Sequence record: MK250029.1
Strand: one strand, 5' to 3'
DNA length: 64,000 bases
Shown: one piece after another, positions 1-27,779 of the stretch
Numbering within the stretch: position 1 is the first letter of the stretch
Layout: each line of letters begins with the position of its first letter
The notes under the pieces: model-generated
What the model saw: only the letters and a program-made list of their open reading frames with translations
Told to the model about the DNA's origin: nothing
The model's database searches: none
Made by a program: the position numbers and the translations under genes

Positions 1-60
1 TAAATCTTTAAAAGGAATAAAACCATTTTCTGTCATTACTTCAGTATTTCCATCAAAACA
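1..60 (-). mobile_element. Intein N-terminal splicing block inserted in ClpX
   Basis: Directly after IVFLDE the frame reads [20 protein letters not shown], a typical intein block A (C1-x-x-G-x-T-x-V-x-T-x-x-G), instead of the expected IDK. Confidence 0.85.
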
Positions 61-633
61 TTCATCTAAAAAGACTATGCCATGTTCTGCTTTCTTAACA
101 TCATAATCACATGCTTGAAGAAGTCTTGTAATAGAAGTTTCTACATCATCACCTACGTAACCTGCTTCTGTAATTGAATTGCAATCTACTATACTAATAG
201 GCACATCTAACATTTTAGCTATAGACTTAACCAATAACGTTTTTCCAACGCCAGTTTCTCCACAAAGTATGCAATTTGACTTCTCAATTTCAACATCATC
301 AAATCCTTTTTGCTTTATTCGTTTATAATGGTTATAAACTGCAACTGCTAATCTTTGTTTTGCTTTATCTTGTCCAATAACATATTGATCTAGAAATTCT
401 TTAATCTCTGTAGGTTTCTTTACATCATCTTTATGAAATTCATCTTCTGGTATAAAATTTGTATTATGATTAATTATACTAAGATTCATATTGTATATTT
501 GATCACAACACTCATTACATATACTACCAAATTCACCATTAAATAATAATGCAACATCTTTTTTTGTTTTACCACAAAATGAACATTTGTTTTCTTTATT
601 TGTATCTTTATTTTTATCTTTCTTAACTGCCAT
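1..633 (-). CDS. clpX: ATP-dependent Clp protease ATPase ClpX, N-terminal part; runs off the window edge and is interrupted by an intein
   Basis: Translation from ATG at 633: C4 zinc finger CSFCG...[31 protein letters not shown], Walker [24 protein letters not shown], Walker B GIVFLDE. Confidence 0.95.
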
Positions 634-750: not shown

Positions 751-2133
751 ATGTAGACCATAAAAATTAAATATACAATAAACGATAATGATAAATTATT
801 GCTTAATGATTATATTAGACAGTATAATCATGTATATCGTGTTGCATTTAATAATTTATAGTCACATAAGAAAAATAAATTATCCGAATTAACAAATTTA
901 AACAATATAGATTTATTAGATAGTTGATTTATATAGTCTGCTAATTATGAAGTGAAAACTTTATATAAATTAGTTGGTGATAAAAAAGTTATATTTGGTG
1001 GAAGAAAAAACTTTATAAAAAGATGTTAGAATAAAATTTCATATGATGAATTTAATTCATATAGATTTCAACCATTATGTAGTTATGGTGAAAAGAAATC
1101 AGGTACGAAATCTGTTCATGGAAATAGAAAATTTAAATTATCAGATGACCTAATATTTATAACATTAAAATTAAAAGAAAGAAAAATTAAAATTAATCTA
1201 CCAAAATATTTACATTCAAATATCAAATATATACTTAAAAATGTATATGTACACCAAATATTAGATGATACACCTATTACATATAAAATAGATTATAATT
1301 ATGTATATATTCAGTTTGATGAATCTGTAATTTTAAATAAAAATAATAATTTAGATAAAATATAGAATCGCGTATTATCATTAGATTTAAATCCTAATTA
1401 TATAGGTTGGTCTATAGTTGATTGGAAGTCAGAGAATGAATTCAATGTTATCAAATCAGGTGTTTATTCTATAAAGAATTTAAATGATAAAGTTTTTAAT
1501 TTAAAAAATAAAGGTTACTCATCAGATTCTAGTGAAAGAAAATATATTTCAGATAAGCGTAATTTTGAGACAATATAGATAGTAAAGAATATAGTTAATA
1601 AATCTATATATTATAAATGTCAACTTATTTCTATAGAGGATTTAAATATTAAATCTTCAGATTTGAATAAAGGTAAGCGACTCAATAAGTTAATTAATAA
1701 TTCATGGTGTAGAAATACATTTGTAAATAATTTAACTAAAAGATGTAATATTCATAATATGAAATTATTAAAGGTTAAACCAGAATATTCAAGTTTTATT
1801 GGTAATTTCTTATATCGTTCATTAAATTTACCGGATATGATATTGGCTTCAATAGAAATAGGAAGACGAGGATATGAATTTTATAATCAATATATAAGTA
1901 AAGTAAAAGAAATTAAAAAGAATATAATAAAACCAGATCTAAATATGTTTAATAGATTGTATCTTAAGTCGTTGGAAGAATTTAAGTTACAACCAATATA
2001 CAAAGATTTGATTGAATTATATTACTTCTTCAAAAAGTCTAAAATGATGTATAGACTTTCTATAGATTAGTTTAATCTATAGTTTTCTAGCTTATTTTCG
2101 AATACTTCATATATAGGGTATTTTTGTTTTTAA
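751..2133 (+). pseudogene. tnpB: TnpB/Cas12f-like RuvC nuclease, about 460 codons with TAG=Gln, interrupted by one in-frame TGA at 925-927
   Basis: One frame from ATG 751 to TAA 2133; RuvC-I RVLSLDLNPNYIGWSIVDW, RuvC-II ISIEDLNI, VKPEYSSFIGN and RuvC-III LPDMILASIEI; no CxxC zinc finger before RuvC-III; no tnpA in the window. Confidence 0.8.
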
Positions 2134-24011: not shown

Positions 24012-24086
24012 GGTCCGTCTGGTGTAATTGGTAACATGGCAGATTGTGGTTCTGCAGTACAGGGTTCGAGCCCCTAACGTGACCCA
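24012..24086 (+). tRNA. tRNA-His(GTG), imperfect acceptor stem
   Basis: Anticodon arm GCAGA-TTGTGGT-TCTGC, D-loop AATTGGTAA, T-loop TTCGAGC. Confidence 0.85.
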
Positions 24087-24153
24087 ATTTAATTTTTAAG
24101 TAAACTATTAATATAGTTCTTAATATAATTATAAGAATATTTTATATTAATAT

Positions 24154-25154
24154 ATGGAAATTAAATAGTTTACAGATGATGCATTAAAACATGTATTTGA
24201 AATATGTACATCAACAATGAATATATTGGAATTATTAGGTTATGAACCATATAAAATAAGAGGATAGAAATGTAAAGAAATATTAAAAATATATGCTAAT
24301 TAGATTGGTGTCAATATAGAAGATTATAAATCAAATAATATAAAATTTAGGATATATAATGAATTACATCCTGTATGTAAAACATGTGGTAAGGACTTAA
24401 CATATTTTCAATATAAGCAAAAATAGGAATTTTGTTGTTCATCATGTGCAGCAACTTATAATAATAAACATAGGATATTATCAAAAAATATACTTAAAAA
24501 ATTTTCATAGGAACAAAACATAGAAGAACTATAGTCCAGAAAACGAAATTATGTATTAAATACAGAGTTAATTAAACAAGGTAAAATCTTAAATGATAAA
24601 AATATTACATATAAAGAACATTATATAGATATAACCAAACTTGGCGTACATATATGTCAAGTATGCGGAAATACATTTATACCTTCAATTACAGTAAAGG
24701 GAAATATATCTAAGTCTACTACATGTTCTGATATATGTCATAAATAGTTAGTAAGTGAAAAATCAAAATAGGCACTTTAGAAACTTATTAATGACGGTCG
24801 GCATAAAGGCTGGATGTCTAGAAATATTACAAGTTATCCAGAAAATTTTTGGATTAATGTATTAAATAATAATCATATAGTTTTTACACGTGAATTTAAA
24901 GTAAAAAAACGTTGTGGATATTATTATTTCTTGGATTTTTTATAGAGCATAATGGATATAAAATTGATTTAGAAATAGATGGACAACAACATAAGTATAG
25001 GAAAGAACATGATATTAAGAGAGATGAATATCTTACATCATTAAATTATATCGTTTATAGGATTGAGTGGAATACTATAAATACGGAAAATGGAAAATTA
25101 TTGATGAAAGAAAAAATTGATAATTTTTTAAATTGGTTTAATAATTTAGAGTAA
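24154..25154 (+). CDS. Zn-ribbon plus Vsr/DUF559-like endonuclease inside the tRNA cluster; needs a -1 frameshift at 24936-24942
   Basis: Frame 0 is open (TAG=Gln) to YYYFLDF; the catalytic continuation IEHNGYKIDLEIDGQQH...RDEYL...VYRIEWN lies in the -1 frame. Confidence 0.75.
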
Positions 25155-25170
25155 AATTATTAAATTATAT

Positions 25171-25244
25171 ATGGTAGTAGTTCAATTGGTAGAATGCTAG
25201 TTTTGGGAACTAGTGGTTTGCGGGATCGTGCCCCGCCTACCATA
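25171..25244 (+). tRNA. tRNA-Pro(TGG), atypical T-loop ATCGTGC
   Basis: ATGGTAG/CTACCAT acceptor, CTAGT-TTTGGGA-ACTAG anticodon arm, GCGGG/CCCGC T-stem. Confidence 0.85.
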
Positions 25245-25362
25245 CAGAATCGATAAATCTGATATTATCCTTACGTAATTAATCAGATTTAAAACTTTAG
25301 ATAGTAAGGTATCTATATAATGGAAGTTCACGCCTAAGGGAAGATTTATACATTATAATTTT

Positions 25363-25437
25363 ACTCTGTTAGCTCAATTGGATTAGAGTAATTCGCTACG
25401 AACGAATAGGTTAGGAGTTCGATTCTCTTACAGAGTA
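25363..25437 (+). tRNA. tRNA-Arg(ACG)
   Basis: ACTCTGT/ACAGAGT acceptor, ATTCG-CTACGAA-CGAAT anticodon arm, TTCGATT T-loop. Confidence 0.92.
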
Positions 25438-25446
25438 CAAACATAT

Positions 25447-25519
25447 ATCTCTATAGTTTAAGTGAATAAAATAGGATTTTCCTAAATTCCAGTTACTGGT
25501 TTGATTCCAGTTAGAGATA
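25447..25519 (+). tRNA. tRNA-Arg(CCT)
   Basis: ATCTCTA/TAGAGAT acceptor, GGATT-TTCCTAA-ATTCC anticodon arm with one mismatch, ACTGG/CCAGT T-stem. Confidence 0.8.
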
Positions 25520-25629
25520 CATTAATTATTTTGATAAAAAATAAGAGAAATATATAGACTTTTATTTAATTTCAACATATACATTATGTTAATTGAATGA
25601 ACAGTTAATAATTAATAATAAAAATACTA

Positions 25630-26045
25630 TTAAAATGTGGGGTTTTGAGTGCCCATCATTTAAAGAGTTTCGAGAAGAAGACATTGTATGTAAAAGCATT
25701 AAGTTTCATTTAGCTGATGAAATGTAGTCAAGCGTGATGGTATCGATGTACATGGGTCCATCCGTATAACTTCGGGGAATCATAAGCATTAATCTTGGAG
25801 AGTACAGTTTTTAGTCTGAAATGACGAATTTTCCTACTGGTTGCTCAATATGATATTAAGAGTCGGAGATAATTATTTGTAAGTTCCACAATTACAAGAG
25901 GAAAATGGAATTAAGTTGTCGGAATAACGTGATTATTCTATGTGCGAGTAAGAGAATGAAAGTAGCATTATATGTATGGTGTACGTATGCATATAGAAAC
26001 AAAGCAAATAATAACCCTTAGAGAATTTGCCGAGAAAAGGACATT
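25630..26045 (+). ncRNA. Candidate large structured RNA in the tRNA cluster
   Basis: About 400 nt with raised GC, no long ORF and many local hairpins (TTTCAT/ATGAAA, TTGTAA/TTACAA, GAATAA/TTATTC, TATATGTAT/ATGCATATA). Confidence 0.4.
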
Positions 26046-26062
26046 AATAGTATTTATAATTT

Positions 26063-26221
26063 GCGGGTATAGCACAATGGTTAGTGTGTCGGTCTTCCAT
26101 ACAAGAATAAACTTGTAAAATTAAACTATATGCTAATAATAAATGTGGTATTATAAAATAAGAGTTCGAATCTCTTGCATATAGCAAACCGAAAATGTCG
26201 GTTCGATTCCGATTACCCGCT
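26063..26221 (+). tRNA. tRNA-Gly(TCC) interrupted at 37/38 by an 87-nt insert (26100-26186)
   Basis: Removing the insert gives a perfect cloverleaf: GCGGGTA/TACCCGC, GCAC/GTGT, TCGGT-CTTCCAA-ACCGA, GTCGG-TTCGATT-CCGAT, U73. Confidence 0.9.
26126..26187 (+). ncRNA. Anticodon-less mini-tRNA nested in the tRNA-Gly insert
   Basis: CTATATGC/GCATATAG acceptor-like stem, D-like arm with GG, canonical T-arm AAGAG-TTCGAAT-CTCTT, followed by CAA like neighbouring tRNA 3' ends. Confidence 0.75.
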
Positions 26222-26521
26222 CAAAGATAAAATTAGGTATACATAGTTTTGTATCGAAGCTTTATATTACCATTAGTTGTAATATTCAAATCGTTCGTTG
26301 ACATGGTTATTCCGTGATGTTAGTAGTAAGTTATAATTAATTTATAGCAAACGGAATATTAATAAAAACGTACTCGGCGTTTAAGTTGAATGTACCACGC
26401 TGCCCGTATGGTAGATATTTAATTAAGCATTTAATTAAGTTGAAACATATGTTTAAAAAACTTATGGTACCACGAGTGTTTTCTACGTTGTTTCACTCAT
26501 TTTTTTGATATAATAATATAT

Positions 26522-26578
26522 GAGAGTCATAACAGCAAATTTAGTTCTATTGTTTATTGGGATAACATAAGACTCTTG
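26522..26578 (+). ncRNA. T-armless tRNA-like element, Pro(TGG)-like
   Basis: 7-bp GAGAGTC/GACTCTT stem, ACAGCAAATT motif, TGTTT-ATTGGGA-TAACA arm, 3-nt connector where the variable loop and T-arm should be. Confidence 0.5.
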
Positions 26579-26594
26579 AATCAATTATATTAGG

Positions 26595-26655
26595 GGAGAT
26601 ATTACAGCAAATTATTATTTAGGATCATACTTTTAATATGAAATTCTTGTCTCCT
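26595..26655 (+). ncRNA. T-armless tRNA-like element, Lys(TTT)-like
   Basis: 7-bp GGAGATA/TGTCTCC stem, ACAGCAAATT motif, perfect arm TCATA-CTTTTAA-TATGA, 6-nt AATTCT replacing the variable loop and T-arm. Confidence 0.7.
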
Positions 26656-26663
26656 GTTTATTT

Positions 26664-26743
26664 GGGTAAATGCCTGAGTGGTCGAAGGGAATGATCTGCA
26701 AAATCATTATTATACGTCGTGTGTTCGAATCACACTTTACCCT
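26664..26743 (+). tRNA. tRNA-Cys(GCA) with an extended variable region
   Basis: GGGTAAA/TTTACCC acceptor, ATGAT-CTGCAAA-ATCAT anticodon arm, GTGTG-TTCGAAT-CACAC, U73. Confidence 0.9.
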
Positions 26744-27070
26744 CTAATATAAAATATTTCCGTGGTATACAGCACGTAAAAAGAGGTTGACTTGTATATT
26801 CTATAGACCTACTGTATAATAATATATATGATGTACATGTGAAACACCATGTTCTATTAAGAGTTCATTAACTGAGGTTAATTTTGAATTGCACTGATAT
26901 TAGATGCATAATATATAATGAATATAACGACGGTACTGTGAAATGACTATTATTTTTAGTTGCTTGGAAACGGCGTACGAAGTTTTTATAATAGTGGAAG
27001 TAATGATAAAACAGTTAAATGTAAATCTTTCTGAGACAATGGGGACAACTTGTAGTAAGAGAGTATTTTT

Positions 27071-27174
27071 GTTGATATAGTTTAATGGGAAAACACCCAA
27101 ATCCCAGGGATAAGAGATAATACTTTGAAATAGGTATTAGAAGATTTTAGATGGTTCGATTCCATTTATCAACT
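27071..27174 (+). tRNA. Aberrant or interrupted tRNA, identity undetermined (104 nt)
   Basis: Good acceptor GTTGATA/TATCAAC, D-arm GTTT/AAAC and T-arm GATGG-TTCGATT-CCATT, but about 30 extra nt and no clean anticodon arm. Confidence 0.6.
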
Positions 27175-27183
27175 CAAATTAAT

Positions 27184-27304
27184 GAAGTGTGTAGTTTAAT
27201 TGGTAAAATATCCTTTGAATAGGACTGTGCGCAGATAGAACATAATGTTAGTCATATTAATCGCATTATTGATAATGATGTTGGTTCGATTCCAACGACA
27301 CTTC
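27184..27304 (+). tRNA. Aberrant or interrupted tRNA, identity undetermined (121 nt)
   Basis: GAAGTGT/ACACTTC stem, D-loop AATTGGTA, T-arm GTTGG-TTCGATT-CCAAC, about 45-50 extra nt in the middle. Confidence 0.6.
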
Positions 27305-27590
27305 CTAATAAATAAAAAGATCTCGGTAATTAGATAAAACATTATATGAGTGAAGCAACTCACCATAACTGCAGATAAATGAGTGAGGGACATAAGAGTG
27401 TATGAAGAAAGATGGACTATGGACACCACCATATAATTGCGTTTTCAATAATAGTAAAGTAAACTTTAGTATAAGTTCCATTAACGCTAAAATAGAAACA
27501 TTGTTATTGAAGTCTACTATGCGTGCGATGGTTTAATGAAACCATTGTAGTTCTAAGGCATTGTAAAACGTTTTATTTATTAATTTTTAT

Positions 27591-27664
27591 GGCGAGATAG
27601 CTTAGTTGGTCAGAGCGCAGGATTCATATCCCTGAGGTCGTGTGTTCAAATCACACTTTCGCTA
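27591..27664 (+). tRNA. tRNA-Met(CAT), elongator-like
   Basis: GGCGAGA/TTTCGCT acceptor, CAGGA-TTCATAT-CCCTG arm, GTGTG-TTCAAAT-CACAC. Confidence 0.88.
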
Positions 27665-27779
27665 CTATTATTTTTTGATTGTTTATTTTTATAAGAGGTA
27701 TATCATTTTTTGGTATATCTCTTTTTTATTTAGGAAATAATGTGTATCTTTGAATTGTTATTAATAAAATAGTAATACA

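What the first reader, a model, noticed from the sequence alone, without database searches (positions are those of the whole stretch)
1..90. Intein inserted in the Walker B motif of a phage ClpX
Seen: the ClpX frame reads GIVFLDE then [20 protein letters not shown], an intein block A beginning at codon 192. Known: inteins favour conserved nucleotide-binding motifs and need Cys, Ser or Thr as the first C-extein residue, whereas ClpX normally continues DE-I-DK. Inference: this is an uncommon intein host, and the phage ClpX must carry C/S/T at that position.
Basis: partly seen in the sequence, partly recalled or inferred. Interest (0 to 1): 0.65.

Follow-up and report, generated by a model that had tools for sequence, protein, structure and literature searches.

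The report
Mobile intein splitting a megaphage ClpX
The ClpX unfoldase gene of the gut megaphage Lak-C1 is interrupted, right after its catalytic Walker B glutamate, by a complete 315-residue self-splicing intein with a homing endonuclease; this is a real and apparently undescribed host for an otherwise ordinary phage intein family.

Summary
The window is Prevotella phage Lak-C1 (MK250029.1, 62001-126000). Its minus-strand ClpX frame reads ...GIVFLDE, then CFDGNTEV...

Extending leftwards in the public record gives one open 737-codon frame:
- a 191-residue N-extein;
- a 315-residue intein;
- ClpX resuming in frame as CDKIARK.

The intein has Cys1, block B T-x-x-H, two LAGLIDADG motifs, a block F/G ending T-G-N (not H-N) and Cys+1. 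Pfam's AAA_2 model is split exactly at positions 83|84. The N-extein ends at residue 185 of 424-residue ClpX structures.

An AlphaFold model (pLDDT 94) matches endonuclease-bearing inteins (TliVMA, PI-SceI). All nine Lak-B genomes are intein-free and read DE-I-DK.

About 30 metagenomic ClpX clusters carry the same intein at the same site. One copy is 89% identical in DNA inside exteins that are only 62-63% identical, with dN/dS 0.12. This indicates recent homing and purifying selection.

The family also sits in MCM (DE|xDK) and TOPRIM primases (GE|xD). It includes the mycobacteriophage Bethlehem RDF intein, which is shown experimentally to splice with a penultimate Gly.

Verdict: a genuine, probably active, mobile class-1-type intein, and a new member of a known kind. 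The invariant block F Cys leaves a class-3-like mechanism open.

The parts
61..633 (-). ClpX N-extein (precursor residues 1-191): zinc-finger domain plus the first half of the AAA+ large domain, up to the Walker B Glu
   Evidence: ORF. Pfam zf-C4_ClpX 16-49 and AAA_2 profile 3-83. Aligns to solved ClpX chains, ending at residue 185 of 424.
487..588 (-). ClpX C4 zinc finger (residues 16-49)
   Evidence: PF06689, E 1.2e-9, above cut-off.
238..261 (-). Walker A / P-loop (GETGVGKT, residues 125-132)
   Evidence: Read directly from the translation. G125, G128, G130, K131 and T132 are nearly invariant in the family alignment.
61..78 (-). Walker B (IVFLDE, residues 186-191). Glu191 is the -1 residue of the intein.
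   Evidence: D190 and E191 are invariant in 32 sequences. E191 aligns with the last residue, 185, of GIVYIDE in the 424-residue ClpX chain 8e91_A.
1..60 (-). First 20 codons of the intein (block A, Cys1 = precursor C192). The other 295 codons lie left of the window, at MK250029.1 61116-62000 (= L001 7116-8000). The C-extein (residues 507-737) lies at MK250029.1 60420-61115.
   Evidence: Intein boundaries are DE|CFDG... and ...VTGN|CDK. NCBIfam intein_Nterm matches residues 1-48 at E 6e-4, below its cut-off.

Best explanation
This is a bona fide, full-length, mobile intein of the canonical (class 1) type. It is inserted between the Walker B catalytic glutamate of a phage-encoded ClpX (the equivalent of ClpX residue 185) and the next residue.

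The gene is translated as a 737-residue precursor in which the AAA+ ATPase module is cut in two, so the precursor should not be a working unfoldase.

Inferred splicing chemistry:
1. The HINT domain folds.
2. Cys1 (C192), helped by block B Thr/His (T259, H262), converts the Glu191-Cys192 peptide bond into a thioester.
3. Cys+1 (C507) takes over the N-extein.
4. The terminal Asn506 cyclises, here without a penultimate His.
5. An S-to-N shift leaves a 422-residue mature ClpX reading DE-C-DK.

The mature ClpX would work with the phage's own ClpP. The released 315-residue intein carries a two-motif LAGLIDADG homing endonuclease. In co-infections it would cut intein-free clpX alleles (Lak-B type, ...GAT GAG ATT GAT AAG...) and be copied in by repair.

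Shown here: the anatomy, the fold, the conserved catalytic residues, intein-free alleles, discordant intein/extein divergence and purifying selection. Inferred: the splicing chemistry and the endonuclease activity.
For: - **Frame and boundaries.** There is one open frame with a precise in-frame 315-residue insert. Pfam AAA_2 is split at exactly 83|84.
- **Intein-free allele.** Lak-B2 ClpX is 418 aa and reads GIVFLDEIDKIARK. Its exteins are 83-94% identical to Lak-C1's.
- **Fold.** The AlphaFold model has pLDDT 94.1 and pTM 0.91. Foldseek's top hits are endonuclease-associated inteins: TliVMA 7qsu at E 8e-17, then PI-SceI and PI-PfuI. It also hits I-DmoI and the AceL NrdHF mini-intein.
- **Catalytic residues in 48 family members.** Cys1 48/48, Thr B:7 48/48, His B:10 48/48, terminal Asn 47/48, Cys+1 46/48. 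The LAGLIDADG acidic residues are present in 46/48 and 46/48 (44 Asp + 2 Glu).
- **Same site.** All ClpX members whose C-terminal junction is present read DE|C...TGN|CDK; P0031 is cut short there.
- **Mobility.** The intein of L094 is 88.8% nt identical to Lak-C1's, while the flanking exteins are 62-63% identical.
- **Selection.** dN/dS is 0.12 overall: 0.09, 0.14 and 0.17 for HINT-N, endonuclease and HINT-C.
- **Experimentally tested relative.** The intein aligns end to end (E 2e-10) with the mycobacteriophage Bethlehem phosphoesterase/RDF intein, which has the same Cys1 / block F Cys / T-G-N signature. That intein splices to completion with its native penultimate Gly, and its endonuclease was toxic in E. 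coli (PMC5050341).
- **Host protein looks functional.** The GYVG, RKH, LGF-loop, Arg-finger and sensor-2 motifs can be read in the exteins. The phage encodes ClpP.
- **Cys is tolerated at +1.** An intact intein-free phage ClpX reads DE-C-DK (L052).
Against: - Curated intein and endonuclease HMMs hit only below their cut-offs: TIGR01445 at 20.7 vs 24.5 bits, and PF14528 at 18 vs 22.5 bits.
- The penultimate His is missing (Gly).
- Block F position 4 is Cys instead of the usual Asp, so the exact mechanism is not settled by sequence.
- No protein-level or expression data were examined. Splicing and DNA cleavage are inferred.
Confidence: 0.85

Rival explanations
1. This is the same intein, but it splices by a class-3-like route (or can use either route). 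The invariant block F Cys (C485) attacks the N-terminal junction and forms a branched thioester before transfer to Cys+1. Cys1 would then be dispensable or secondary.
For: - Cys at F:4 is 48/48, Thr at G:5 is 44/48, and there is no penultimate His in 47/48.
- The Cys-to-terminal-Asn spacing is 21 residues, as in Msm DnaB-1 (118/139), Mle DnaB (124/145) and MP-Be DnaB (320/341).
- The best sequence match among solved structures is the class 3 AceL NrdHF intein (E 5.9e-7). That intein also lacks Trp B:12 and the penultimate His (PMC7891396).
- Three TOPRIM members have Trp at B:12.
Against: - Cys1 is invariant (48/48). Class 3 is defined by the lack of an N-terminal nucleophile.
- B:12 is Arg in all ClpX members.
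- +1 is Cys, not Ser/Thr.
- Class 1 inteins with Cys at F:4 are known and reported to fall outside the class 3 clade (PMC3196547).
- Kelley et al. treat the related Bethlehem RDF intein as class 1.
- Grafting WCT onto a class 1 intein did not give class 3 splicing (PMC7664689).
Confidence: 0.12
2. The insert is a decayed, non-splicing intein remnant. The phage clpX of Lak-A/C is then effectively a pseudogene, and the host's ClpX does the work.
For: Sub-threshold HMM scores and the missing penultimate His. One related Lak-like copy (P0009) has lost the second LAGLIDADG Asp, so decay does occur in this family.
Against: - The 737-codon frame is intact.
- Every splicing residue is conserved across 39-99% identical copies.
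- dN/dS is 0.09-0.17 in all three parts of the intein.
- The fold is predicted with high confidence.
- Extein motifs are intact and 99.5-100% conserved between Lak-A and Lak-C.
- A relative with the same T-G-N end splices fully.
Confidence: 0.03
3. Splicing is conditional. Disulfides among Cys1, Cys+1 and the block F Cys (or another cue) hold the precursor, so the intein acts as a redox or timing switch on phage ClpXP activity.
For: There are three conserved cysteines at the active site. Disulfide-trapped precursor conformers were seen for a mutant of the related RDF intein. A mycobacterial DnaB intein has been described as an oxidative stress sensor (title and abstract of PMC6195587).
Against: There is no direct evidence here. 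The wild-type RDF relative spliced completely before time zero. The host is an anaerobe with a reducing cytoplasm. The conserved endonuclease and the homing signature explain persistence without any benefit to the phage.
Confidence: 0.08

Closest known systems
Mycobacteriophage Bethlehem RDF/phosphoesterase intein (gp51 in Kelley et al. 2016; gp52 in AY500153)
   Same: - End-to-end alignment, E 2e-10.
- Cys1, T-x-x-H, Cys at block F:4 (VWC vs VYC), a T-G-N C-terminus with penultimate Gly, and a LAGLIDADG endonuclease.
- Experimentally splices completely. Changing Gly to His slows splicing.
   Different: Only 21% identical. The host protein is a metallophosphoesterase, not an AAA+ ATPase. +1 is Ser, not Cys. 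-1 is Asp in a GNHD motif.
Cluster A1 mycobacteriophage TOPRIM-primase inteins (e.g. Switzer gp56, Turj99) and metagenomic TOPRIM/DnaB primase-helicase inteins
   Same: - 28-37% identical over the full length.
- Sister clade of the ClpX inteins in the tree (SH-aLRT 96 and 99; joint node 91).
- Same junction logic...GE|C...TGN|CD.
   Different: Different host fold and active site (TOPRIM acidic motif, not Walker B). B:12 is I, M, L or W instead of Arg.
AAA+ inteins at or next to Walker B: cyanobacterial PolIII gamma (DnaX) site a, archaeal MCM sites d/e (Novikova et al. 2016, PMC4760082)
   Same: Insertion immediately after or around the Walker B motif of an AAA+ ATPase. One metagenomic MCM (P0029) carries an intein of the very same lineage at IIDE|...|CDK and falls within the ClpX+MCM intein clade (99; its exact position there rests on forks of 81-83).
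   Different: Those hosts are replication proteins of cells. ClpX, a protein unfoldase, is not named among hosts in the main text of that survey. I did not test whether the DnaX and archaeal MCM inteins belong to this sequence family.
AceL NrdHF class 3 split intein (PDB 6ZGQ)
   Same: Best sequence match among solved structures (E 5.9e-7) and a structural match (TM 0.75 on the target). It has Cys F:4 and Thr G:5, no Trp B:12 and no penultimate His.
   Different: It starts with Ala, is naturally split, has no endonuclease domain, and uses a proven class 3 mechanism. The Lak intein keeps Cys1 and is contiguous.
Chlamydomonas eugametos chloroplast ClpP intein
   Same: The only Clp-system intein mentioned in the surveyed literature.
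   Different: It sits in the peptidase subunit, not the ATPase. No sequence relationship was tested or implied.

Membership tests
Intein (HINT splicing domain) | In-frame insert that interrupts a conserved host protein, which resumes exactly where it stopped | tested here: met
   AAA_2 profile 3-83 before the insert and 84-166 after it. The intein-free Lak-B2 allele is colinear.
Intein (HINT splicing domain) | Nucleophile (Cys/Ser/Thr) at intein position 1 and at +1; C-terminal Asn | tested here: met
   C192, N506 and C507 in the precursor. Family counts: 48/48, 47/48 and 46/48 (+1 Ser in one).
Intein (HINT splicing domain) | Block B T-x-x-H | tested here: met
   TPNH (T259, H262). Both are 48/48 in the family.
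Intein (HINT splicing domain) | Penultimate His (block G:6); common but not obligatory | tested here: not met
   Gly505, and Gly in 47/48 family members. Natural and optimal in the related Bethlehem RDF intein.
Intein (HINT splicing domain) | HINT fold | tested here: met
   Model pLDDT 94. Foldseek probability 1.00 to TliVMA, PI-SceI, PI-PfuI and AceL NrdHF.
Intein (HINT splicing domain) | Score above the curated HMM cut-off (TIGR01445, PF14890) | tested here: not met
   TIGR01445 scores 20.7 bits vs a 24.5 cut-off. There is no PF14890 hit for this copy, only faint hits for some relatives.
Intein (HINT splicing domain) | Actual protein splicing | not testable with these tools
   Needs expression or a metaproteomic junction peptide.
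LAGLIDADG homing endonuclease (intein-borne, two-motif) | Two LAGLIDADG helices, each ending in a catalytic acidic residue | tested here: met
   ..FAADG.. (D320) and ..YWDG.. (D408). Family counts: 46/48, and 44/48 + 2 Glu.
LAGLIDADG homing endonuclease (intein-borne, two-motif) | Fold and curated HMM | tested here: inconclusive
   The fold matches I-DmoI and PI-SceI. PF14528 scores only 18 bits vs a 22.5 cut-off.
LAGLIDADG homing endonuclease (intein-borne, two-motif) | Site-specific cleavage of the intein-free allele | not testable with these tools
   Indirect support only: intein 88.8% nt identical vs exteins 62-63%, and dN/dS 0.14 in the endonuclease part.
Class 3 inteins | No Cys/Ser/Thr at position 1 | tested here: not met
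   Cys1 in 48/48.
Class 3 inteins | Trp at B:12 | tested here: not met
   Arg264. All ClpX and MCM members have Arg. Trp occurs in only 3 TOPRIM members.
Class 3 inteins | Cys at F:4 and Thr at G:5 | tested here: met
   C485 (48/48) and T504 (44/48). The F:4 assignment rests on the VY-C-VTV motif, the strand topology of the model and the 21-residue spacing to Asn. I had no coordinates to measure distances.
ClpX (AAA+ unfoldase) | C4 zinc finger + AAA_2 + D2-small domains | tested here: met
   PF06689, PF07724 and PF10431 are all above cut-off. Solved ClpX chains match the N-extein at E down to 8e-50 and a family profile at E 1e-120.
ClpX (AAA+ unfoldase) | Partner peptidase present | tested here: met
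   PF00574 ClpP at 238 bits at MK250029.1 126598-127140.

The most novel reading that the evidence does not exclude
The ClpX / MCM / TOPRIM / RDF phage intein family keeps Cys1 but also has an invariant block F:4 Cys, Thr G:5 and no penultimate His. It could be a living mechanistic intermediate between class 1 and class 3 inteins: it may use, or be able to fall back on, a block F branched thioester. That would be the phage progenitor state that Tori and Perler postulated for class 3.
Probability: 0.12. Interest if true: 0.6.

Novelty: new member of a known kind. Interest (0 to 1): 0.4.

Why it matters
- **New host protein.** It adds a protein-quality-control ATPase (ClpX) to the list of intein hosts, which is dominated by replication, repair and packaging enzymes. 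The intein sits directly after the catalytic Walker B glutamate, so the phage's ClpXP can only become active after splicing.
- **Natural population system.** Lak-A/C carry the intein, Lak-B lacks it, and a second intein lineage occupies the same site in other Lak-like phages. This offers a natural system for studying intein homing among uncultivated megaphages.
- **Site hopping.** One intein lineage occupies look-alike acidic motifs in unrelated enzymes: DE|xDK in ClpX and MCM, and GE|xD in TOPRIM. That is consistent with ectopic homing guided by local sequence.
- **Annotation.** The Lak records carry no annotation, and this 737-codon gene would otherwise look like an odd oversized ClpX.

Tried and rejected
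- No whole genome is held for the window. I extended leftwards through the public record instead.
- A single-sequence search of the intein against PDB sequences found nothing.
- A profile of the last 55 residues also found nothing, so block F:4 could not be anchored residue by residue on a solved class 3 intein.
- A profile from whole proteins (A2) was swamped by ClpX columns.
- The two genome-contig scans, for close relatives and for the junction pattern, found none. This is weak evidence that the ClpX intein is absent from cellular genomes, because only four to six short patterns were used.
- Tori and Perler 2011 (PMC3133030) is not held, and the supplements of Novikova et al. are not held. 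I therefore cannot exclude that a ClpX intein sits in some supplementary list or in InBase.
- I considered a class 3 assignment and rejected it, because Cys1 is invariant and B:12 is Arg.
- I considered a pseudogene or decayed insert and rejected it on conservation and dN/dS.
- The idea that L052 (DE-C-DK without an intein) is a fresh intein-loss footprint of the P0027 lineage is not supported. Its exteins are only 58-67% identical to P0027's. It shows only that Cys is tolerated at that position.

Full report
**Identity of the window and check of the observation**

The window is 100% identical to Prevotella phage Lak-C1, MK250029.1, positions 62001-126000. This is a 540-kb circular megaphage genome from human faeces, deposited without annotation.

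The minus strand of window 633..1 is an open frame that runs off the left end. It starts MAVKK and carries a ClpX C4 zinc finger and the first half of an AAA+ module. The Cys is codon 192. Walker B is window 78..61, and the first 20 intein codons are window 60..1.

**Extension to the left**

No whole genome is held for the window, so I read the same public record upstream (L001 = MK250029.1 54001-63000). The frame continues unbroken for 737 codons (L001 8633..6420, minus strand). It contains no TAG codon, so it is open under table 11 as well as under the TAG=Gln code that Lak phages use.

The insert is 315 residues long (precursor 192-506). Its ends are DE|CFDGNTEV and ...FVTVTGN|CDKIARK. After it, ClpX continues with the pore loops, the LGF loop, the Arg finger and sensor 2.

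Pfam's AAA_2 model matches profile positions 3-83 before the insert and 84-166 directly after it. The N-extein aligns with solved ClpX chains and stops at residue 185 of the 424-residue chain, at the end of GIVYIDE. From general knowledge, that is the Walker B catalytic Glu (E185) of E. coli ClpX.

**Is the insert an intein?**

Curated HMMs see it only faintly:
- intein_Nterm: E 6e-4, 20.7 bits against a cut-off of 24.5;
- LAGLIDADG_3: E 3e-3, 18 bits against a cut-off of 22.5.

A single-sequence search of PDB sequences found nothing. Homologues settle the question.

A word-indexed search of 5.8 billion proteins with the intein region returned about 30 ClpX clusters with a related intein (39-99% identity). 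It also returned related inteins in an MCM, many TOPRIM primase-helicases, a PolA and a terminase-like protein. tblastn against GenBank phages found 211 records. The hosts are annotated as primase, DNA polymerase, NAMPT, RNR beta, RNA ligase and DnaB-like helicase.

With these sequences as the alignment, AlphaFold2 gave a model with mean pLDDT 94.1 and pTM 0.91. Foldseek matched it to:
- endonuclease-bearing inteins (TliVMA 7qsu at E 8e-17, PI-SceI, PI-PfuI);
- the LAGLIDADG enzyme I-DmoI;
- the AceL NrdHF mini-intein.

Conservation at catalytic positions in 48 family members:

| Position | Residue | Count |
|---|---|---|
| Intein 1 | Cys | 48/48 |
| B:7 | Thr | 48/48 |
| B:10 | His | 48/48 |
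| F:4 | Cys | 48/48 |
| G:5 | Thr | 44/48 |
| G:6 | Gly | 47/48 |
| G:7 | Asn | 47/48 |
| +1 | Cys | 46/48 |
| -1 | Glu | 45/48 |
| LAGLIDADG motif 1 | Asp | 46/48 |
| LAGLIDADG motif 2 | Asp (Glu) | 44 (+2)/48 |

The one difference is that the intein ends Gly-Asn rather than His-Asn.

**Intein-free alleles and mobility**

Lak-B2 encodes a colinear 418-residue ClpX that reads GIVFLDEIDKIARK. At the DNA level, the site is GAT GAG ATT GAT AAG in Lak-B2 and GAT GAA [intein] TGT GAT AAG in Lak-C1.

Of the 15 deposited Lak genomes, the five Lak-A records and Lak-C1 carry the intein (98.7-100% identical). The nine Lak-B records do not. The best 80 IMG/VR phage ClpX loci are all intein-free by length. 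At the +1 position they have Ile 70, Phe 5, Gly 2, Val 2 and Cys 1.

Intein and extein histories disagree:
- The copy in contig L094 (protein P0003) is 88% aa and 88.8% nt identical to Lak-C1's intein. Its exteins are 33-48% aa and 62-63% nt identical.
- A Lak-like megaphage ClpX (P0009, on contigs up to 533 kb, with similar neighbouring genes) has exteins 72-74% identical but an intein only 55% identical. That intein has lost the second LAGLIDADG Asp.

Between Lak-C1 and L094 the intein has dN/dS 0.12. By part, this is 0.09 for the N-terminal HINT part, 0.14 for the endonuclease part and 0.17 for the C-terminal part.

The combination of sporadic presence, discordant divergence and purifying selection on both the splicing and the endonuclease parts is the expected signature of an active homing intein.

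**Family relations**

In a maximum-likelihood tree of 56 inteins:
- The ClpX inteins plus the single MCM intein form one clade (SH-aLRT 99).
- The TOPRIM inteins, including mycobacteriophage Switzer's, form the sister clade (SH-aLRT 96; joint node 91).
- Lak-C1's intein pairs with P0003 (99). It is separated from the P0009 intein, so two lineages of the intein occupy the same site among Lak-like phages.

Junction contexts are alike across hosts:
- ClpX: (I/L/V)DE|C...TGN|CDK
- MCM: IIDE|C...TGN|CDK
- TOPRIM: EGE|C...TGN|CD

I infer that the lineage moved between unrelated enzymes through look-alike acidic motifs. The direction of these moves is not resolved.

**An experimentally characterised relative**

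The phosphoesterase gene of mycobacteriophage Bethlehem carries an intein beginning CSWTN. It has T-A-N-H, a VWC block F, and ends LTGN|S. It aligns end to end with the Lak intein (E 2e-10).

Its length (317 residues) and penultimate Gly at position 316 fit the 'Bethlehem gp51 RDF intein' of Kelley et al. 2016, which:
- spliced completely in a reporter;
- was slowed by G316H;
- had an endonuclease toxic enough that only an inactivating mutant could be cloned (PMC5050341).

This removes the missing His as an argument against activity.

**Mechanism**

I commit to the class 1 pathway: Cys1 thioester, transfer to Cys+1, Asn cyclisation, then an S-N shift. This is inferred from the invariant Cys1, T-x-x-H, Asn and Cys+1, and from the class 1 treatment of the RDF relative.

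A class-3-like route is not excluded. The family has:
- an invariant Cys at block F:4 and Thr at G:5;
- no penultimate His;
- the same 21-residue Cys-to-Asn spacing as proven class 3 inteins;
- as its best sequence match among solved structures, the class 3 AceL NrdHF intein, which itself lacks Trp B:12 and the penultimate His.

Against membership in class 3: Cys1 is invariant, B:12 is Arg, and +1 is Cys. Class 1 inteins with Cys at F:4 are known and were reported to lie outside the class 3 clade.

**Consequence for the phage**

The precursor has Walker A and Walker B on one side of a 315-residue insert. The rest of the AAA+ large domain and the whole small domain lie on the other side. I infer that it is inactive until spliced.

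The mature protein would be 422 residues and read DE-C-DK. Lak-C1 also encodes a ClpP just beyond the right end of the window (MK250029.1 126598-127140, 238 bits). The phage therefore appears to bring its own ClpXP.

**Novelty**

No paper in the library holds 'inteins', 'ClpX' and 'homing endonuclease' together. The hits for 'ClpX' plus 'intein' look like engineering uses. Two Lak phage papers mention neither inteins nor Clp.

The large survey of Novikova et al. names MCM, PolIII gamma, RFC, LonB and chloroplast ClpP as hosts, but not ClpX, in its main text. Its supplements are not held.

The intein itself is an ordinary member of a widespread phage family. What is new is the host protein and site, and the population picture in Lak megaphages. 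I rate it a new member of a known kind, with interest about 0.4.

Noticed in passing
window 952-2133 (+): A 393-codon ORF that is open only if five in-frame TAG codons are read as Gln (code 15). It has motifs reminiscent of RuvC-type nucleases (..LSLDLN....ISIEDLN..), so it may be a TnpB/Cas12-like protein. That resemblance is from memory only. There are no Pfam or PHROG hits.
   Followed up: partly
L001 854-3640 (-) = MK250029.1 54854-57640, left of the window; ortholog L002 8747-11536: A 928-residue ORF with nine in-frame TAG codons (five in the Lak-B2 ortholog) and a Walker A/B ATPase core. It shows that the genome reads TAG as sense, whereas the ClpX-intein gene has no TAG at all.
   Followed up: no
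window 24012-27665 (+): A cluster of six tRNA genes: His-GTG, Pro-TGG, Arg-ACG, Arg-CCT, Cys-GCA and Met-CAT. There is no TAG suppressor tRNA inside this window.
   Followed up: no
MK250029.1 126598-127140 (-) and 163886-164296 (-), right of the window: A strong ClpP (238 bits) about 0.6 kb beyond the window's right end, and a second, weaker ClpP-like stretch with one in-frame TAA.
   Followed up: no
MK250029.1 361062-361403, 391517-393354, 423782-424078 (outside the window): Further Intein_splicing (PF14890) matches elsewhere in the Lak-C1 genome, two of them above the cut-off. Some lie in stretches full of stops, so they may be split or fractured genes. There are also LAGLIDADG-like matches at 167494-167865. 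The ClpX intein is thus one of several in this phage.
   Followed up: no
L095 3565-4509 (protein P0009, Lak-like megaphage contigs up to 533 kb): The same ClpX site is occupied by a divergent intein (55% identical) whose second LAGLIDADG motif reads YWGG instead of YWDG. The endonuclease has probably decayed while the splicing residues are kept.
   Followed up: partly
L052 3001-4194 (IMGVR_UViG_3300032007_000091): An intein-free phage ClpX that reads DE-C-DK, the only Cys among 80 loci. It is either an old intein-loss footprint or an independent substitution. Its exteins are only 58-67% identical to the nearest intein-bearing ClpX compared.
   Followed up: partly
proteins P0032 and P0035 (metagenomic primase-helicases): Each carries two inserts. 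One is an intein of this family in the TOPRIM motif (EGE|C...TGN|CD). The second is an intein in the helicase P-loop (..GING|C...ITGN|SGKS). In P0035 the second one looks shortened in its endonuclease region.
   Followed up: no
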